Below, one piece after another: positions 2,713-30,119 of a stretch of DNA of 30,202 nucleotides. The notes below the pieces were generated by a model. The model worked only from the letters and a program-made list of their open reading frames with translations, searched no databases and was not told where the DNA came from. Positions within the stretch are counted from its first letter, which is position 1. Each line of letters begins with the position of its first letter. A program made the position numbers and the translations under genes. The DNA comes from Octopus sinensis (taxonomy: Eukaryota), in NCBI RefSeq assembly GCF_006345805.1, contig NW_021832687.1, forward strand, positions 1-30,202. The letters run 5' to 3'.

Positions 2713-2871
2713 AACAACATCGAAAAATACCTGAGAAATGAGAACCCAGGTTCGAAATTTTCCCAAGACACCTGATGAAGGCTTGAAGGTATATCAGCCG
2801 AAACGTTGTGTTAACAACAGACAAGAGGAGGACAAATATCCGTCAAATGTAAATAATGTAAATAATGTAAA
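2713..2871 (+). mobile_element. Short hammerhead-bearing repeat (Penelope pLTR / retrozyme-like), copy 2
   Basis: Inverted copy of 1741-1921. It contains the hammerhead at 2767-2812 and ends in tandem (AATGTAAAT) units. Confidence 0.7.
2767..2812 (+). ncRNA. Minimal type I hammerhead ribozyme motif
   Basis: GACAC-CUGAUGA-A-GGCU...AGCC-GAAA-CG-U-U-GUGUU. Stem I is 5 bp, stem II 4 bp, and stem III is the palindrome ACGU. Predicted cleavage is after U2807 (GUU triplet). Confidence 0.72.
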
Positions 2872-3063
2872 TCAGCTATTTTTGGGGATTGAGAAACGAA
2901 GAGGAAAACAGTAGGCAGATTGCGAACCGAGGAGGAAATAAAGATAGGAATAAGTAAGAAAGAAAGTTGAGAAAAGAGAGTGAAATGAACGATACAGAGG
3001 AAGAATCGGGAAGTGAAGAGATAAACATAAAATGTGTGTCTTCGTAATATATCTTATTAATAA

Positions 3064-13820: not shown

Positions 13821-13955
13821 TTAACAGCCACGTAATTTTCCACAAGTACGATTTAAGAATAAATTTCAAAGGAGCAGCTACTAGTCTGAAGATATGACCA
13901 TCTGCTGCTGGTTACGTCCAGCACCATCAACATACCCTCCGAGACCATGAAGATA

Positions 13956-14397
13956 CGAGGAGTGTTCATTCAAGTTTTTTTTCCCTGAGCCACTTCCGGT
14001 TATTGTAGGAAACGCAACTTGTACAGGTATAATCATACCTGTCGCTACATGGTACGTTGTAAATTGTAGCTTTCCACAAGTGTTCGTTTGTCTTTTACGA
14101 CTACTGAAGTGGACTAAAGTGTTATAATGGACTTCCATCTCTTTCCAACCATGAAATCTTTTTTGAAGAGGAAACACTTTTCGGTTGATGATGAACTTAT
14201 TTCCGAGGTAAAGTTTGGCTCCAGACGCATCCTACCGACTTCTACAGATGAGGTCTTTATAGCTGCATAAAGCGATGGGAGAAGTGTGTCACCATTTGGT
14301 GGTGGCCATGCAGAGAAGGACTAATAATTATGCCAAGTTTCATTTAACTCAGACCTTGGGAAGTGGGTCAGGGGAAATATTTAATGAACTTTCCTTG
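13956..14397 (+). mobile_element. Internally deleted mariner transposon (442 bp)
   Basis: TA duplications at 13954-13955 and 14398-14399. Imperfect ~40-bp TIRs (CGAGGAGTGTTCATT...CCACTTCC / GGAAGTGG...AATGAACTTTCCTTG). Retains the transposase C-terminus DFHLFPTMKSFLKRKHFSVDDELISEVK..DFYR*GL...KRWEKCV. Confidence 0.9.
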
Positions 14398-20755: not shown

Positions 20756-21256
20756 ACTGTCAACCTTTCCATTACAATTTATACATATACATACATACAT
20801 ATATATATATATTGTGTGTGCGTGCGTGTGTGTGTGTATGTGTGTGTGTGTGTGTATGTTTGTGTGTGTTTGTGTGAGAGTGTGCTTGTGTGTTTGTGCG
20901 TGTGTGTGTGTGCTATGTCATTATTCAGTTTATTTCCAGATGTCTTGCCTATAGAGAAAGAACCAGTTTCTAACCTAGATCCAAGACTTCTTCATTGGAA
21001 TGTCAACATCAACAACAGGGTATTTTTGTTTGTAAGCATGTATGTATGTATGTATGTATGTATGTTTGTATGTATGTATGTATGTATGTATGTATGTATG
21101 TATGTATGTATGTATGTATGAATGTGTGTACACACAAACACACACGCACACACACACACAAACATATATATATAGTTTAAATTTATAGAAAACAAAGATA
21201 GGTGCAGGGACAACAAGCAGGTATATTAGTTTCACGCTCAGGAAAAATGGAAAAGT

Positions 21257-21292
21257 CTTTTACGTTTCGAGACCACGCTCTTCGACAGAAAG
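21257..21292 (-). ncRNA. Atypical minimal hammerhead-like motif (A6 to U)
   Basis: The minus strand reads CUUU-CUGUCGA-A-GAG-CGUGGU-CUC-GAAA-CG-U-A-AAAG. It has an ACGU palindrome, 4-bp stem I and 3-bp stem II, with a non-canonical core. Confidence 0.45.
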
Positions 21293-21823: not shown

Positions 21824-21973
21824 TTAATCCAGTGTATTCAGTGTTGATAGCATGTCAGGACGCGGTGCCTGCGACGGAGCCATGCTCTTCAGTGCGGTCC
21901 GTGCGTACTCGGATGTCAAAAGTCCAGCGTCCCGCAGCTTCTCTTCCAAACGAAAGCGTGGATCAGATGTAAC
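21824..21973 (-). CDS. CCDC148: Terminal coding exon of a CCDC148-like gene (49 aa + TAA)
   Basis: The minus strand shows a pyrimidine tract and acceptor (tcttctcttctgtcatcgcag|), then the phase-0 frame [49 protein letters not shown]. This matches my recollection of the CCDC148 C-terminal motif (SDPRxRxExxLRxAGL..xYA...P..PRxDMxST). It is a GC-rich island within SSRs. I could not identify upstream exons in the window. Confidence 0.8.
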
Positions 21974-22029: not shown

Positions 22030-22189
22030 TCTATTTCTCTCCTCCCTCTCTCTTTTCTCTCTCCTTCTTTCTCTCTCTATTTATCTCTCTCTCTCTCTCT
22101 CTGTCACACACATATATACATGTATATATATATACATATATATAGATATATATATATATACATACGTACATACGTACATATACATATAT

Positions 22190-22234
<45 letters not shown>

Positions 22235-22322
22235 TACATACATATATATATCCCAAAAATATACATATATATAGATGCATACTTTATAATATATACATAA
22301 CTACATACATACATATATATAT

Positions 22323-22380
<58 letters not shown>

Positions 22381-22417
22381 CTATATATATAATATATATA
22401 TATGTATATATAATATA

Positions 22418-22471
<54 letters not shown>

Positions 22472-22485
22472 TATATATATAATAT
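22030..22485. repeat. (CT)n/(TA)n/(TACA)n microsatellite block in the last intron of the CCDC148-like gene
   Basis: Direct reading, immediately upstream of the acceptor on the minus strand. Confidence 0.85.
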
Positions 22486-22627
22486 GTAGTCCCGGGTTGA
22501 TTCGGGGTTAACCACAGTAAATAAGGTACTCAATACATAGCAGAGTAAAATTAATTTATTATATAGAAGGAGCTTCTACAGGACTAGAACTGTTTCATTC
22601 AATAGAATCTTCAGGAAGCTCCTATAT
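22486..22627 (-). mobile_element. ~140-bp hammerhead-bearing insert within an (AT)n tract
   Basis: A complex-sequence island flanked on both sides by long (AT)n, containing the hammerhead at 22568-22623. Confidence 0.55.
22568..22623 (-). ncRNA. Type I hammerhead ribozyme motif
   Basis: The minus strand reads AGGAGCUUC-CUGAAGA-UUC-UAUU-GAA-U-GAAA-CAG-UUCUAGUC-CUGU-A-GAAGCUCCU. Stem I is a perfect 9 bp, stem III 4 bp, with a GUA cleavage triplet. Stem II is short and atypical. Confidence 0.75.
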
Positions 22628-22628
22628 A

Positions 22629-22679
<51 letters not shown>

Positions 22680-23737
22680 TGATAATATATTATTACTATT
22701 AGGAATTAAAATATATATCAAAAAACTCCTCAGAAAGATATACACGTATGAAAAATAATTGTTGTATTAAAAATATAAATATAAATAAGTATAAATTTGT
22801 ATAAAAATGTATGTAAATATGTATAAGTAAGAATATATATGTGTATGACAGTTTAAAAGTTTTGAATTGAGTATTTACAGCATCTTACGATAGTTTCACA
22901 GAATTGTTGTCCCTGTAATGAAATCCTATATCGATAAGCATTTATAGTCAACTCTTCTGCTCTTCAGAGATATAAATTTGAATTTTGTATAATATATCGA
23001 ATGATAGTTTTTTTTTTTTTAAATTTGAAGTAATACTATAAAATGGTGTTTGTTTGAAAGATGAATTAAAAATGAAGACCCTGTGGAGGGCTCTTCATTG
23101 AACCTTTGACCCAATAATGACACTTCATGCATTAAGTAAATATTAAATTTTTTAAACTTGACCAATATTTGTCAAGCAATGGACAATTTTCATCAAAACA
23201 ATGATATAATTTGCCGACTTGGAACTTATTGGAAAGTTGCATGATAAATGATATTATTTGTCTTCCTATTTAGGGGTCAGTACAATTTTTTGTCTAACCT
23301 CTTTCTATCTCTCTCTCTCTCTCTCTCACCCTCTTTCTCATTCTGTTGATTGTTTTCAACCAACACGAGTACCACCACCATCGCCACCACAACTGCCATA
23401 CGCACATCAGTCAGATTTCTGACGCCACCACCACCAATACCAATGACTTCGCCGCCTTCCTCTCCACCACCATCACTACTGTCTTTCACATCGCTTACTA
23501 TTAGCGTCATCCCTGACCGCCTCGGTTACCACCATCATCACCGTCGCCTCCATCACAACTACAGTTCATACTATTACTATCACCCCATGACCATCACAAC
23601 CGTCAATCTACTACCGCCGTCACCGTCTCTATGCCTGCATGATGAATAGTAGGAGTGTCACTGAATAGTGAGAGAAGAGGTCAAAGTGTGACACACTGAC
23701 ACAGAAATTCGGGTTGGCATTTATTATTATAGATGTA

Positions 23738-25080: not shown

Positions 25081-25916
25081 AATCTTTGCAAGCTTCTAAC
25101 GCTGGAGATGTATGCGGTATCTGCTGTTCACTACCAATGAACTAAGGTAACACCCGCCTTACTTTTCGAACACCATCCGGAGTATTCGAGCGGTTCTAAG
25201 CAGTGTTATTTTCTGCAAGTGCGCCACCCTTATTGCAACCCCTATTTGTTCCATGTACTTCTCAAAATTTTACTCACTGTTCCCAGGGCTCCGACAATTA
25301 TTGGTACTACTGCTACCTTTTTCATCGACCACAACTGCTTTACCTCCCAAGCTAACCTGTCATACCTATCGACTTTTCTTTCTTCCTTATCACATATCTT
25401 GTTGTTAGCTGGACAGGCTATATCTATGATCCAGGATTGTTTGCTTTCTTTCACAATTAAGACTATGTCTGAATTCCTATTCTCTATCTCATGGTCCCAC
25501 CGAATCATAACATCCCATTTGATCTTTGCATTATCATTTTAGATGATGACTTCGGGTTTATGTTGTTCTTTCTTTTGCTCTGTCAAGTCCATACTTGTTG
25601 CATAGTGTCCGATGGATAATCCTTGCTACATTGTCATGACGTCTCTTATATTCTTTCTGGGCTAGTGGCATACATTGACTGGTAATATGCCATACGGTTT
25701 CACCATTTTGTCCACACATTCAGCACCTATCACTTTCTGATGTGTTGTCTATTCTGTATTTGATGTAATTGATTCTTAGTGCTTGCTCTTGGGCAGCACA
25801 GATTAGAGCCTCCGTTTCCCGGTTTAAATCACTTTCAGTCATCCATAGCCATCTTTTTTCTGTCATATCTTCAACATCCCTATGAAATTGTCCATGCATT
25901 CTTTTCTTTATCCACC
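25081..25916 (-). mobile_element. 5'-truncated R4/Dong-like non-LTR retrotransposon, second family
   Basis: Translates to WIKKRMHGQF...LNRETEALICAAQEQAL...C, RHDNVA, NSDIVLI...WIIDIACP...VVPIIVGALGTV and LQKITLLRTARILRMVFEK*. It is flanked by (AAT)n. Confidence 0.9.
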
Positions 25917-25956
<40 letters not shown>

Positions 25957-26470
25957 GAGTGAGAGAGCAGTGCATGCCATCAAAGTGACACTGGGGTAAA
26001 ATATACGAAGCCCAATATACCCATCATGACTACCCGTCTGATAAAGGTACACCAGGCACATGCATCACAACCATATGTGCGTGACATGGTGATCTCATAT
26101 CAAGATAAACCACATGACCTTGCAGGTGGGGCCCAGTTAGAATTTTCTTCAGGTTGAGTAGCCCATCCGCTCAAAAGGTCCCTGAATAAGGATTGTTAAG
26201 GATGTTGAAAGAACCACCATGTTTCCAGAGGTGAATTATTCAAACCCCAAAGAATCCCTCTCAACACATGGCTATGATGCTCCTCCACTACTTCTGCTCG
26301 TGATCAGAGATGCCACATCGTCAGCCACTAAGGGACATGCTCAACTGGTTAAGGTCAAACAACTGACAAGCAAATCTGTGGTATTGAGCAGAATATTTGC
26401 TGTAGCCCATCTTTTATACCAAGACAAAACAATGTACATGATAACACTTCCAATCAGTTAAGATCAGAAG
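25957..26470 (-). mobile_element. ~555-bp (AAT)n-associated element, copy 4 (about 40 nt 5'-truncated)
   Basis: Starts at TTCTGATCTTAAC with an intact 3' end. An (AAT)n tail joins it to the LINE at 25916. Confidence 0.9.
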
Positions 26471-27082: not shown

Positions 27083-27449
27083 GTCATTTCATTAATTCTG
27101 TATTTGTTTTGACTTCCATCTGAAACAAGTGGAAGGAGAGTGGAACATTTTAATTCGCAGCAATATTAGACAACAATTGAATTCATGATGGAACAATCTT
27201 CTGCAAAATAAATATACAAATATATAAATAAATAAATAAATAAATAAATTACTAAATAGCTGAATAAATACATAAAAAGTAAGCCTTAAAAACGAAAGAA
27301 AAATATGAAATCCAAAAATGTAACGAAGATTTTCTTCATTTTGTTTGCGAAGAAACTACGAAAAGGAGAAGTGGGAAGAAGCACCAAAAGTAACAAAGAA
27401 ATTAATAACTAACACGACTATGAAGAAAACATCAGCAGCAAGAACAAGA

Positions 27450-28026
27450 ATAAATTGAAAAGGAAGAAAGAAAGAAAGAAAGAAGAAAAGGAAGGAAAAC
27501 GGAATGAAAGAAAGAAAGAAAGAAAGACGGAAGGAAGGAGGGTAGGCAGGAATGAAGGAACGAAGGAAGGAATAGAGTGAGGAGGGATGGCGGTAAAAGA
27601 AAGAAAGAAAGGAAAAGGAGAGAAAGAAAAAAGAAAGGAAACAGGAAAGAAATACAGAAGTGGCAGAGAGAAAGAGAAAGGAAGAAAGAAGGAAGGAAGG
27701 AAAGAAGGAAGAAGGGATGGCAGGAAGAGAAGGCAGGAAGGAAGGAAGAAAGGAAAGAAGGAAAGAATAGAGGAAGGAGGGAAGGCGGAAGAGAGAGAAA
27801 AAGAAAGACAAAAGGAAAGAAAGACAGAAAGGGAGTGAAAGAAAAGAAGGAAAGAAGGAAACAAGAAAGAAATACAAAAGAGGCAGAGACAAAGAAAGAA
27901 AGAAAGAAAGAAGGAAGGAAAGAAGAAGGAAGGGATGAAGGAAGGAAGGAAGGAAGGAGGGATGGAAGGAAGGAAGAGAAGAAGGAAGGAAGGAAACAAG
28001 AAAGAAATACATAAAAGGCAGAGACA

Positions 28027-28058
<32 letters not shown>

Positions 28059-29142
28059 GAAAGAATGAAAGAAGGGATGGAGGAAGGAAGGAAGGAAGGA
28101 AGAAAGGAAGAAAGGAATAGAGGAAGGAGGGAAGGCGGAAAAAGTAAAAAGAAAAGTAGAGAGAGAGAAAAAGACAAAAAGAAAGGGAGAGAAAGAAGAC
28201 AGAAAGAAAAAAGGAGGAAACAAGAAAGAAATGCAGTAAAGAAAGAAAGGAAGAAAGGAAGAAATAATGGAAGAAAGAAAGACACAAAGAAAAAAGAAAG
28301 AAGAAAGAAAGAAAGAAGAAAAGAAAAAAGGATGAAGAAATAAAGAAAAAACGGAAGCAATGAATGAAGGGAAAAAAGGAAGAAGGAAAGAAAGAAAGAA
28401 AAAAGAAAGAAAGAAAGAAGAAAGAAAGGAACGAACGAACGAACGAAGGGATGGAGGAAGAAAGGAAGGCGCGAAAATAAGGAAAGAAAGGTAGACACAG
28501 AAATAAAGAAAAAAGAAAGAAGGAAAGAAAGAAAAAAAGAAAGAAAGAAAGGAAGAAAGAAAGAGAAAGAATGAAATAAGGGATGTAGGAAGGAAGGAAG
28601 GATTAGAAAGGAAATAAAGGAATAGAGGAAGGAGGGAAGTCGGAAAAATTAAAAAGAAAAGTAGAGAGAGAGAAAAAGACAAAAGAAATGGAGAGAAAGA
28701 AGACAGAAATAAAAAGGAGGAAACAATAAAGAAATGCAGTAAAGAAAGAAAGGAAGAAAGGAAGAAATAATGGAAGAAAGAAAGACACAAAAAAAAGAAA
28801 GAAGAAAGAAAGAAGAAAAGAAAAAAAGGATGAAAATAAAGAAAAAACGGAAGCAATGAATGAAGGGAAAAAGGAAGAAGGAAGAAATAAAGAAAAAAGA
28901 AAGAAAGAAAGAAGAAAGAAAGGAACGAACGAACGAACGAAGGGATGGAGGAAGAAAGGAAGGCGCGAAAATAAGGAAAGAAAGGTAGACACAGAAATAA
29001 AGAAAAAAGAAAGAAAGAAAGAAGGAAAGAAAGAAAAAAAGAAAGAAAGAAAGAAAGAAAGGAAGAAAGAAAGATAAAAAGAAAGGAAAGAAGAAAGAAT
29101 GAAAGAAGGAAAGAAAGGAAGGATGGAAGGAAGGAAGAAAAA

Positions 29143-29173
<31 letters not shown>

Positions 29174-29741
29174 GAAGGGTGGAAGAAAGATAAAAAGAAA
29201 GGAAGGAAGAAAGAATGAAAGAAGGAAAGAAAGGAAGGATGGAAGGAAGGAAGAGAGAAAGAAAGAAAGAAAGAAAGAAAGAAGGAAAGAAAAAAGGATG
29301 AAGAAAGAAAGAAAAAACGGAATAATGAACGAAGGGAAAGAGGAAGAAGGAAAGAAGTAAAGAAAGAAAGAAAGAAAGAAAAAAGAAAGAAAGAAAGAAA
29401 GAAAGAAGAAAGAAAGGAACGAACGAACGAAGGGATAGATGAAGAAAGGAAGGCGGGAAAATAAGGAAAGAAAGGTAGACACAGAAATAAAGAAAAAAGA
29501 AAGAAAGAAGGAAAGAAAGAAAAAAAGAAAGAAAGGAAGAAAGGAAGGGTGGAAGAACAGAAGATAAAAAGCAAGGAAGGAAGAAAGAATGAAAGAAGGA
29601 AGAAAGGAAGGATGGAAGGAAGAAGAAAGAAAGAAGAACGAAAGAAAGAAAGGAAACAGAAGGTGGAAGAAGAAAGATAAAAAGAAAGGAAGGAGGAAGG
29701 AAGAATGAAAGAAGGAAAGAAAGGAAGGATGAAGGAAGGAA

Positions 29742-29774
<33 letters not shown>

Positions 29775-29998
29775 GAAGAAAGGAAGGGTGGAAGAAAGAA
29801 AGATAAAAAGAAAGGAAGGAAGGAAGAATGAAAGAAGGAAAGAAAGGAAGGATGGAAGGAAGGAAGGAAGAAAGAAAGAAAGAAAGAAAGAAAGGAAGAA
29901 AGGAAGGGTGGAAGAAAGAATGAAAGAAGGAAAGAAAGGAAGGATGGAAGGAAGGAAGTAAGAAAGAAAGAAAGAAAGAAAGAAAGGAAGGAAGTAAG
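27450..29998. repeat. Polypurine (GAAA/GGAA) satellite with higher-order structure
   Basis: The plus strand is almost entirely A/G. Diagnostic motifs recur about 490-495 bp apart. Confidence 0.92.
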
Positions 29999-30119
29999 AT
30001 AATTTGAAAATTTTATCAAAATTAAAATTTTGATTAATCACTGGTTAGGATTTCGTGACTGCTATTTTTGTCGTACTAATACACCACACACACGTACTCA
30101 CACACACTAATACGCACAC

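What the first reader, a model, noticed from the sequence alone, without database searches (positions are those of the whole stretch)
22568..22623. Well-formed type I hammerhead in the sense strand of the last intron, ~600 nt before the 3' splice site
Seen: perfect 9-bp stem I, CUGAAGA/GAAA core, a closed 4-bp stem III and a GUA site (cleavage predicted between 22577 and 22576), so it could fold as a monomer. Stem II is unusual (UUC/GAA plus an extra U). It lies in a ~140-bp insert within (AT)n. Known: intronic hammerheads occur in vertebrate genes. Inference: together with 21257-21292, sense-strand ribozyme-like motifs bracket the terminal exon and could affect pre-mRNA processing, though they may be neutral TE passengers.
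Basis: partly seen in the sequence, partly recalled or inferred. Interest (0 to 1): 0.78.

Follow-up and report, generated by a model that had tools for sequence, protein, structure and literature searches.

The report
Hammerhead-like relic in an octopus intron
A hammerhead-ribozyme-shaped sequence really lies in the sense strand of the last intron of an octopus CCDC148-like gene, but it is an off-consensus single copy at the head of a short mobile-element-like insertion in an (AT)n repeat, so it is most likely a neutral passenger rather than a regulator.

Summary
On the minus strand, 22623->22568 forms a three-way junction with a 9-bp stem I, the CUGAAGA and GAAA core, a closed 4-bp stem III, and a GUA site that predicts cleavage between 22577 and 22576. 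It is the only such hit in the window and none of 400 shuffles matched it. Stem II departs from consensus: 10.1-11.1 is U-A, not G-C, and an extra U lies before G12. The predicted fold pairs A9 with that U. No Rfam hammerhead model accepts it.

The motif heads a 149-bp insert (22634-22486) in (AT)n. The insert ends 91 nt after the cut site in a stem-loop with an AC-rich loop. That layout matches a studied Penelope-like element and a multi-copy hammerhead repeat family seen here. The window holds three other hammerhead relics of the Penelope type.

No second copy of the target turned up in about 158 kb of related DNA, so family membership is unproven. The gene context is supported: the terminal exon matches CCDC148 C-termini.

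Most likely this is a weak or dead ribozyme in a retroelement fragment with no role in mRNA processing. Cleavage was not testable here.

The parts
22568..22623 (-). Hammerhead-shaped three-way junction as flagged: stem I 9 bp, core, stem II, stem III and cleavage-site triplet GUA
   Evidence: Sequence. Descriptor scan gives one hit in the window. MFE fold -16.6 kcal/mol, z -2.7. Coordinates of each piece.
22608..22614 (-). Core C3-A9, CUGAAGA
   Evidence: All six specified core positions match the consensus.
22597..22607 (-). Non-canonical stem II: UUC-UAUU-GAA followed by an unpaired U at 22597. 10.1-11.1 is U-A instead of G-C. In the predicted fold, A9 (22608) pairs with U22597.
   Evidence: P(A9-U pair) is 0.29 against P(stem II) 0.31. 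The hammerhead-competent structure is 1.7 kcal/mol above the MFE.
22593..22596 (-). G12 A13 A14 and A15.1 (GAAA)
22577..22593 (-). Stem III, ACAG/CUGU with 8-nt loop, then U16.1 (22578) and A17 (22577). Predicted scissile bond between 22577 and 22576.
22624..22634 (-). 5' arm of an 11-bp extension of stem I (AUUUAUUAUAU). It pairs with 22564-22554 across the 3-nt bulge UCU (22567-22565).
   Evidence: MFE of the 153-nt stretch is -38.4 kcal/mol, z -4.3. None of 772 stretches of the neighbouring AT arrays could give 11 bp.
22554..22567 (-). Bulge and 3' arm of the stem I extension
22486..22553 (-). 3' tail of the insert. It ends in an interrupted 10-bp stem-loop (UGUGGU..CCCG-AAUCAACC-CGGG-ACUACA) with an AC-rich loop. 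The insert ends 91 nt after the predicted cut site and abuts (AT)n.
   Evidence: Compared with the PAc Penelope-like element, where the cut lies at +26 and reverse transcription starts at +111-118 in an AC-rich stem-loop (PMC11167929).
22112..22485 (.). (AT)n array flanking the 3' end of the insert
   Evidence: Tandem Repeats Finder.
22635..22690 (.). (TA)n array flanking the 5' end of the insert
   Evidence: Tandem Repeats Finder reports 22623-22690. The first 12 bases are assigned here to the element because they pair in stem I.
21827..21973 (-). Coding part of the terminal exon of the CCDC148-like gene (VTSDPRF...NTLD, then the stop codon at 21826-21824). Acceptor cag|GTTACA.

Best explanation
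The motif is a hammerhead-derived sequence carried at the 5' end of a roughly 149-bp fragment of a retroelement (22634-22486, minus strand). The fragment is most likely a severely 5'-truncated or non-autonomous element of the Penelope-like or retrozyme world that integrated into an (AT)n microsatellite.

Shown: the hammerhead architecture is there and is far beyond chance. The insert sits in (AT)n, ends 91 nt after the predicted cut site in a stem-loop with an AC-rich loop, and lies in the sense strand of the last intron of a CCDC148-like gene.

Inferred: the element arrived by endonuclease nicking of AT-rich DNA and reverse transcription starting in its 3' stem-loop, as shown for one Penelope-like element. 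As a ribozyme this copy is weak or dead, for three reasons. U-A replaces G10.1-C11.1. An extra U lies 3' of stem II and tends to pair with A9. The perfect 9-bp stem I offers no partner for a stem I / loop II tertiary contact, so at cellular Mg2+ it would behave at best like a slow minimal hammerhead.

It therefore rides in the intron as a neutral passenger and is removed with the intron.
For: 1. The motif is real and not chance.

2. Hammerhead-bearing repeats are dense in this genome. The window holds three further motifs with all Penelope-type minimal-hammerhead hallmarks: a nucleotide between A9 and 10.1, G10.1-C11.1, and palindromic ACGU. They lie at 2772(+), 1862(-) and 21288(-). Chance expectation is 0-0.01 per window. 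88 kb of Octopus sinensis DNA holds more.

3. Two of these three families are multi-copy. The family of the 21288 motif shares a 3' end..TT(A/C)AAC, that abuts (TA)n or (CA)n 86-95 nt after its cut site. The target has the same layout, 91 nt and then (AT)n.

4. In the Anolis PAc element the hammerhead cut lies at +26 and reverse transcription starts at +111-118 in an AC-rich stem-loop, which is 85-92 nt. Its endonuclease prefers AT-rich DNA (PMC11167929).

5. Penelope-like elements favour microsatellite targets including (TA)n (PMC8557442). Most genomic hammerheads of this kind occur as single motifs from truncated elements (PMC4209133).

6. For weak or no activity: Rfam hammerhead models reject it. 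The predicted fold pairs A9. G10.1-C11.1 is described as the most conserved pair apart from A15.1-U16.1, and tertiary contacts raise activity by orders of magnitude at low Mg2+ (PMC3088659).
Against: - No second copy of the 149-bp insert was found in the window, in 88 kb of O. sinensis, or in 40 kb of two ENA contigs that share no repeats with the window and whose source organism I did not identify. A repeat family is therefore inferred, not shown.
- The motif lacks all three hallmarks of metazoan Penelope-type minimal hammerheads. It has a stable helix III and a 20-bp interrupted helix I instead.
- No Penelope-like RT or endonuclease ORF is in the window.
- The insert keeps the whole extended stem I, which random 5' truncation does not explain.
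- Natural active hammerheads tolerate 2-bp stem II and even a U10.1-U11.1 mismatch (PMC3088659), so inactivity is not proven.
- The 91-nt match rests on one studied lizard element and one octopus family.
Confidence: 0.6

Rival explanations
1. It is an active, monomeric type I hammerhead of an unusual variant (U10.1-A11.1 with a bulged U before G12). It self-cleaves the CCDC148-like pre-mRNA in the last intron and so lowers or modulates use of the terminal exon.
For: All invariant core positions, A15.1-U16.1 and an allowed H17 are present, and stems I and III are stable enough for action as a monomer. It is in the sense strand, about 595 nt upstream of the acceptor. Natural hammerheads with weak or mismatched stem II and with some core insertions do cleave (PMC3088659). 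Conserved intronic hammerheads exist in amniotes (reference list of PMC7229834).
Against: No conservation data could be obtained. Stem II deviates at the most conserved stem pair, and the predicted fold removes A9 from the core. No tertiary contact is evident. Rfam models do not recognise it. It sits in a mobile-element-like insert in a genome dense with hammerhead relics. In vertebrates, retrozyme hammerheads are reported as depleted from introns (abstract of 10.64898/2026.07.22.740005), which argues that active ones in genes are removed rather than co-opted.
Confidence: 0.05
2. The insert is a 5'-truncated tRNA-derived SINE lying on the plus strand. Its T-arm or B-box-like hairpin is at 22488-22511 and its tail is (TA)n. 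On this reading the hammerhead shape lies on the element's antisense strand and has no role in the element.
For: The plus strand reads CCCGGGTTGATTCGGGG, which resembles the tRNA B box GGTTCGANTCC and folds as a hairpin. Another hammerhead-bearing element in the window carries GGTTCGAAATT. SINEs are common in cephalopod genomes (PMC6962438).
Against: ARAGORN finds no tRNA-like gene. There is no similarity to any other repeat in the window or in L128. The hammerhead shape is about 1e-7 unlikely by chance even given a hairpin, so the strand that carries it is the meaningful one. In the other element the B-box-like site and the hammerhead lie on the same strand.
Confidence: 0.12
3. It is a plain inverted repeat or foldback: a 20-bp interrupted stem with a 38-nt loop, for example a MITE-like or microRNA-like hairpin. 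Its loop only happens to resemble a hammerhead core.
For: The arms 22634-22615 and 22576-22554 form a long interrupted stem. Several microRNA models give weak Rfam hits.
Against: The probability that a random 38-nt loop meets the descriptor is about 1.2e-7. All Rfam microRNA hits are far below threshold, with E of 0.6 or more in a search of 74-82 nt.
Confidence: 0.05

Closest known systems
Hammerheads of Penelope-like elements and their truncated copies (Cervera and de la Pena 2014, PMC4209133; PAc element, PMC11167929)
   Same: A type I hammerhead carried by a short insert. Insertion into AT-rich or microsatellite DNA. Occurrence as a single dispersed motif. About 90 nt from the cut site to the 3' end of the insertion, which ends in a stem-loop with an AC-rich loop. 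Low expected activity as a lone motif.
   Different: Metazoan Penelope-type hammerheads are 'minimal': helix III is absent or tiny and palindromic, helix II is 6-8 bp, helix I is 4-5 bp, there is an unpaired nucleotide between A9 and 10.1, and G10.1-C11.1 is conserved. The target has none of these. It has a 4-bp helix III with an 8-nt loop, a 3-bp helix II starting with U-A, an extra U on the 3' side of helix II, and a 9+11-bp helix I. No RT or endonuclease ORF is nearby.
Metazoan non-LTR retrozymes with canonical type I hammerheads (Cervera and de la Pena 2020, PMC7229834)
   Same: Type I topology, low G+C content, invertebrate (including mollusc) host, and a helix III more stable than in amphibian motifs.
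   Different: Retrozymes are tandem repeats of about 170-400 bp with canonical helix I and II sizes, and many have loop-loop contacts. The target is a single non-tandem copy with a deviant stem II and no evident tertiary contact.
Amniote intronic hammerheads HH9 and HH10 (Rfam RF02275, RF02277)
   Same: Sense-strand position within an intron of a protein-coding gene, and a closed helix III that would allow action as a monomer.
   Different: HH9 scores only 12.9 bits against a gathering score of 52, and the alignment deletes the catalytic core. HH9 and HH10 are defined by deep conservation, which could not be shown here.
Large-helix-III type I hammerheads of fungal and protist Penelope-like elements and of bacteria (PMC4209133)
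   Same: A stable helix III, helices I and II of unusual sizes, and no recognisable tertiary interaction.
   Different: Those motifs are described from other kingdoms (PMC4209133). Whether they share the stem II deviation was not checked, and there is no evidence of relatedness.

Membership tests
Hammerhead ribozyme (class) | Conserved core C3 U4 G5 A6 N7 G8 A9 and G12 A13 A14 | tested here: met
   CUGAAGA at 22614-22608 and GAA at 22596-22594.
Hammerhead ribozyme (class) | A15.1-U16.1 pair followed by H17 (not G) at the cleavage site | tested here: met
   A22593 pairs with U22578, and A17 is at 22577.
Hammerhead ribozyme (class) | Three helices radiating from the core | tested here: met
   Stem I 9 bp, stem II 3 bp, stem III 4 bp. 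This is the MFE fold in every context tried.
Hammerhead ribozyme (class) | Helix II stacked directly on the core: G10.1-C11.1 (most conserved stem pair) with 11.1 adjacent to G12 | tested here: not met
   The pair is U22607-A22598, and an extra U (22597) precedes G12. The predicted fold pairs A9 with that U. Conservation of the pair is stated in PMC3088659 and PMC4209133.
Hammerhead ribozyme (class) | Tertiary contact between loop II and a loop or bulge in stem I (extended, fast form) | tested here: inconclusive
   Stem I is uninterrupted for 9 bp. The only bulge lies beyond that, and stem II is 3-4 bp with a UAUU loop. The geometry looks unfavourable, but no 3D test was possible.
Hammerhead ribozyme (class) | Score at or above the gathering threshold of an Rfam hammerhead model | tested here: not met
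   No hit at gathering thresholds. At E up to 10 the only hit is HH9, 12.9 bits against 52, with the core unaligned. Hammerhead_1 is not listed.
Hammerhead ribozyme (class) | Site-specific self-cleavage | not testable with these tools
   Needs an in vitro transcription and cleavage assay.
Penelope-type minimal hammerhead | Unpaired nucleotide between A9 and 10.1, G10.1-C11.1, and palindromic 15.x-16.x with little or no helix III | tested here: not met
   None of the three is present in the target. All three are present in the motifs at 2772, 1862 and 21288.
Penelope-like element insertion (5'-truncated or non-autonomous) | Insertion into AT-rich or microsatellite DNA | tested here: met
   (AT)n lies on both sides. 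The target preference is described in PMC8557442 and PMC11167929.
Penelope-like element insertion (5'-truncated or non-autonomous) | 3' end at an internal RT start site in a stem-loop about 85-92 nt after the hammerhead cut | tested here: met
   The distance is 91 nt, and the insert ends at the base of a stem-loop with an AC-rich loop. The benchmark is a single element plus the octopus family in alignment A1, at 86-95 nt.
Penelope-like element insertion (5'-truncated or non-autonomous) | Membership of a multi-copy family, or linkage to an RT/GIY-YIG ORF | tested here: inconclusive
   No other copy was found in about 158 kb: the window, L128, L129 and L130. No such ORF is in the window. Whole octopus genomes were not searchable.
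Metazoan non-LTR retrozyme | Head-to-tail tandem repeats of about 170-400 bp, each with a type I hammerhead | tested here: not met
   A single motif with no tandem or nearby copy.
Amniote-type conserved intronic hammerhead (HH9/HH10) | Conservation at the orthologous intron across species | not testable with these tools
   The only octopus locus retrievable (O. sinensis L128) stops before the terminal exons.

The most novel reading that the evidence does not exclude
A catalytically competent hammerhead variant that tolerates U10.1-A11.1 and a bulged U between helix II and G12. It would act as a monomer in the last intron of an invertebrate protein-coding gene and tune terminal-exon use. That would make it the first gene-embedded, possibly co-opted hammerhead in a mollusc, and a core variant I did not find described in the papers read here.
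Probability: 0.04. Interest if true: 0.6.

Novelty: new member of a known kind. Interest (0 to 1): 0.2.

Why it matters
If it is what it appears to be, it adds one more example to the known flood of retroelement-borne hammerhead relics in invertebrate genomes, and little changes.

Two points have modest value. First, current Rfam models miss every hammerhead-like motif in this octopus window, four in 30 kb, so cephalopod hammerhead counts based on Rfam are likely large underestimates. Second, the target combines a monomer-competent architecture with an unusual stem II. If it cleaved, it would widen the known tolerance of the core and give a natural test of what a sense-strand intronic ribozyme does to splicing in an invertebrate.

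Tried and rejected
- **Rfam scans.** The whole window at gathering thresholds gave nothing. Three permissive scans of 321, 82 and 74 nt gave only a misaligned 12.9-bit HH9 hit.
- **Other copies in the window.** BLAST of the insert against the window found none.
- **Pattern scan of public collections.** I scanned metagenome and viral contigs for CTGANGATTC-N3-6-GAATGAAAC. It returned 128 matches, none with hammerhead-compatible flanks, so all are chance.
- **Orthologous intron.** A word-index protein search with the exon peptide found nothing. An exact-ORF contig look-up found nothing. The O. sinensis CCDC148-like protein (522 aa) is C-terminally short, and its 88-kb locus contains neither the terminal exon nor DNA colinear with the window.
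- **More octopus DNA.** Using a LINE-tail ORF as bait gave only two ENA contigs that share no repeats with the window.
- **Penultimate exon.** The candidate at 23052-22963 was rejected: it has no donor site and the surrounding frame is poor.
- **Pfam.** Window ORFs gave nothing informative.
- **tRNA or SINE reading.** ARAGORN found no tRNA.
- **Relatedness to the other hammerhead elements in the window.** No similarity beyond the core.
- **Supplementary consensus sequences of PMC8557442.** Not held in the library.

Full report
**1. What is in the sequence**

On the minus strand, 22623->22568 reads:

AGGAGCUUC CUGAAGA UUC UAUU GAA U GAAA CAG UUCUAGUC CUG U A GAAGCUCCU.

| Piece | Sequence | Coordinates |
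|---|---|---|
| Stem I, 5' strand | AGGAGCUUC | 22623-22615 |
| Core C3-A9 | CUGAAGA | 22614-22608 |
| Stem II, 5' strand | UUC | 22607-22605 |
| Loop II | UAUU | 22604-22601 |
| Stem II, 3' strand | GAA | 22600-22598 |
| Extra U | U | 22597 |
| G12 A13 A14 | GAA | 22596-22594 |
| Stem III, 5' strand (from A15.1) | ACAG | 22593-22590 |
| Loop III | UUCUAGUC | 22589-22582 |
| Stem III, 3' strand (to U16.1) | CUGU | 22581-22578 |
| H17 | A | 22577 |
| Stem I, 3' strand | GAAGCUCCU | 22576-22568 |

The predicted scissile bond lies between 22577 and 22576.

**2. Is it more than chance?**

- A relaxed descriptor found only this site on both strands of the window. The descriptor required stem I of at least 4 bp, stem II of at least 2 bp and stem III of at least 3 bp, and allowed 0-1 extra nucleotide on either side of stem II.
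- Dinucleotide-preserving shuffles gave 0.0375 relaxed hits per window, never with a stem I longer than 6 bp. None of 400 shuffles was as good as the real site.
- If a 9-bp hairpin with a 38-nt loop is taken as given, the chance that a random loop meets the descriptor is about 1.2e-7.
- ViennaRNA predicts the three-way junction as the minimum-free-energy structure for the 56-mer (-16.6 kcal/mol, z -2.7) and within contexts of 111, 281 and 501 nt.

**3. Where it departs from a 'well-formed' hammerhead**

- The 10.1-11.1 pair is U-A rather than G-C. The G-C pair is described as the most conserved stem pair apart from A15.1-U16.1 (PMC3088659) and as a hallmark even of minimal Penelope-type motifs (PMC4209133).
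- An extra U (22597) lies between stem II and G12.
- The predicted fold uses that U to pair with A9. The hammerhead-competent structure lies 1.7 kcal/mol above the MFE, and nearly every ensemble member that forms stem II also forms the A9-U pair (P 0.29 against 0.31).
- Stem I is uninterrupted for 9 bp and stem II is only 3-4 bp. I see no partner for the loop II / stem I contact that raises activity by orders of magnitude at physiological Mg2+ (PMC3088659).
- Rfam does not recognise it. There is nothing at gathering thresholds in the whole window. In permissive scans of 74-321 nt the only hammerhead hit is HH9, at 12.9 bits against a threshold of 52, in an alignment that deletes the catalytic core. 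The classical type I model is not listed.

On the other side, natural active hammerheads with 2-bp stem II, a U10.1-U11.1 mismatch and some core insertions are documented. Inactivity is therefore likely but not proven.

**4. The element around it**

- Tandem Repeats Finder places (AT)n at 22112-22485 and (TA)n at 22623-22690.
- Stem I continues beyond the flagged coordinates. After a 3-nt bulge (UCU, 22567-22565), eleven more pairs form between 22634-22624 and 22564-22554. The 153-nt MFE is -38.4 kcal/mol, z -4.3.
- None of 772 stretches taken from the neighbouring AT arrays could give 11 pairs; the maximum was 9. These bases therefore belong to the element, which spans 22634-22486, or 149 bp.
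- Its 3' part ends in an interrupted 10-bp stem-loop with an AC-rich loop (..CCCG AAUCAACC CGGG ACUACA). The last base before (AT)n lies 91 nt after the predicted cut site.

**5. Comparison with hammerhead-bearing retroelements**

From the literature:
- Penelope-like elements carry hammerheads in their terminal repeats, and most genomic copies occur as single motifs from truncated elements (PMC4209133).
- They favour microsatellite targets, including (TA)n (PMC8557442).
- In the one element studied biochemically (Anolis PAc), the hammerhead cut lies at +26. The endonuclease nicks AT-rich DNA. Reverse transcription starts internally in an AC-rich stem-loop at +111-118, which is 85-92 nt after the cut (PMC11167929).

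From the window itself:
- A descriptor for the Penelope-type minimal hammerhead found three further motifs: 2772(+), 1862(-) and 21288(-). Chance expectation is 0 to 0.01 per window.
- The first two are inverted copies, 93% identical, of a roughly 150-bp element next to (AAT)n arrays.
It belongs to a diverged multi-copy family that is also present three times in 88 kb of Octopus sinensis.
- That family shares a 3' end..TT(A/C)AAC, which abuts (TA)n or (CA)n 86-95 nt after its cut site (alignment A1).

The target has the same layout: hammerhead, about 90 nt, 3' end, microsatellite. That is the main reason I read it as a retroelement fragment.

**6. What argues against simple membership**

- The target has none of the three hallmarks of metazoan Penelope-type hammerheads. 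It has a stable helix III and a very long helix I instead.
- It shows no sequence similarity to the other hammerhead elements.
- No second copy was found in the window, in 88 kb of O. sinensis, or in 40 kb of two ENA contigs of unidentified origin that share no repeats with the window.
- A pattern scan of metagenome and viral contigs returned only chance matches.
- No RT or endonuclease ORF lies nearby.

The family is therefore inferred from architecture, not demonstrated. I could not search whole cephalopod genomes with the tools available.

**7. Gene context**

- The ORF at 21976-21827 (minus strand) follows a polypyrimidine tract and cag|GTTACA.
- Its peptide matches the last 45-49 residues of roughly 600-aa proteins (E down to 1.8e-11). 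Their sources name them coiled-coil domain-containing protein 148 or 148-like.
- In the two closest full-length relatives, unnamed Logan transcript products (P0002, P0055), the junction reads ..SDQ|V(T/A)SDPRF.
- No upstream exon was detected in the window, so the last intron probably runs past 30202.
- The annotated O. sinensis protein is C-terminally short (522 aa). Its locus plus 10 kb does not reach the terminal exon, so the orthologous intron could not be compared.

**8. Function**

With four hammerhead relics in 30 kb, three of them on the gene's strand, one in the last intron and one about 535-570 nt after the stop codon are expected by density. The first AATAAA downstream of the stop is at 20934. 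The downstream motif has an A6->U change in an essential core position and no helix III.

I therefore see no support for a designed 'bracket' of the terminal exon. The most likely reading is a weak or dead ribozyme in a retroelement fragment that is spliced out with the intron (confidence about 0.6). Rivals:
- An active regulatory intronic ribozyme (0.05).
- A plus-strand tRNA-SINE fragment with the motif in antisense (0.12).
- A coincidental foldback (0.05).

The remainder is an origin I cannot name.

**9. Novelty**

Retroelement-borne hammerheads in invertebrates are well known, and hammerhead hits have been reported in a cephalopod genome (235 in Architeuthis, PMC6962438). This is a new, off-consensus member of a known kind. 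Its interest is low unless cleavage or conservation is shown.

Noticed in passing
window 2767-2812 (+) and 1867-1822 (-); elements 2716-2875 (+) and 1918-1768 (-): Two inverted copies (93% identical) of a roughly 150-bp element, each next to an (AAT)n/(ATT)n array. Each carries a Penelope-type minimal hammerhead with a perfect core (GACAC CUGAUGA A GGCU..AGCC GAAAC GU U GUGUU; the minus copy has GAAAA). A tRNA B-box-like GGTTCGAAATT lies about 25 nt upstream on the same strand. One more copy is in O. sinensis L128 at 11814-11660. Rfam does not detect them.
   Followed up: partly
It has an A6->U core change and sits between (GT)n/(TG)n runs. It belongs to a diverged multi-copy family. L128 49708 carries the intact core CUGACGA, and further copies lie at L128 58694-58854 and 76893-76789. 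The family's 3' end abuts (TA)n or (CA)n 86-95 nt after the cut.
   Followed up: yes
L128 (Octopus sinensis CM016873.1, 35273979-35362162): The annotated O. sinensis CCDC148-like protein (522 aa) ends ..VGEQFTLQI and lacks about 80 C-terminal residues that are present in other cephalopod and mollusc orthologues. The terminal exon seen in the window is not within 10 kb of the annotated gene end. This is either an incomplete gene model or an alternative 3' end.
   Followed up: partly
window 25242-26061 (-): ORF fragments (..CGQNGETVWHITSQC.., ..IDIACPANNKI..VVPIIVGALGT..) that look like the C-terminal region of a LINE-type reverse-transcriptase protein, going by my own recollection of such proteins. 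Pfam gave no hit. The closest database relatives lie on ENA contigs next to RVT_1 ORFs.
   Followed up: partly
window 27356-30041 (-): A purine/pyrimidine-skewed low-complexity block of about 2.6 kb (GC skew up to 0.93, AT skew up to 0.90). It produces long spurious ORFs of 869 aa (S/F/L-rich) on one strand and K/E/R-rich ORFs on the other.
   Followed up: no
window 13881-14270: ORF fragments resembling the C-terminus of a mariner/Tc1-type transposase (..DFHLFPTMKSFLKRKHFSVDDEL..), going by my own recollection. Pfam found nothing for the one ORF I tested.
   Followed up: no
window 22634-22554 (-): Unexplained: the insert keeps the complete 20-bp interrupted helix I, and its 5' edge lies exactly at the base of that helix. 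Random 5' truncation would not predict this. It may be the natural 5' end of a small non-autonomous element.
   Followed up: no
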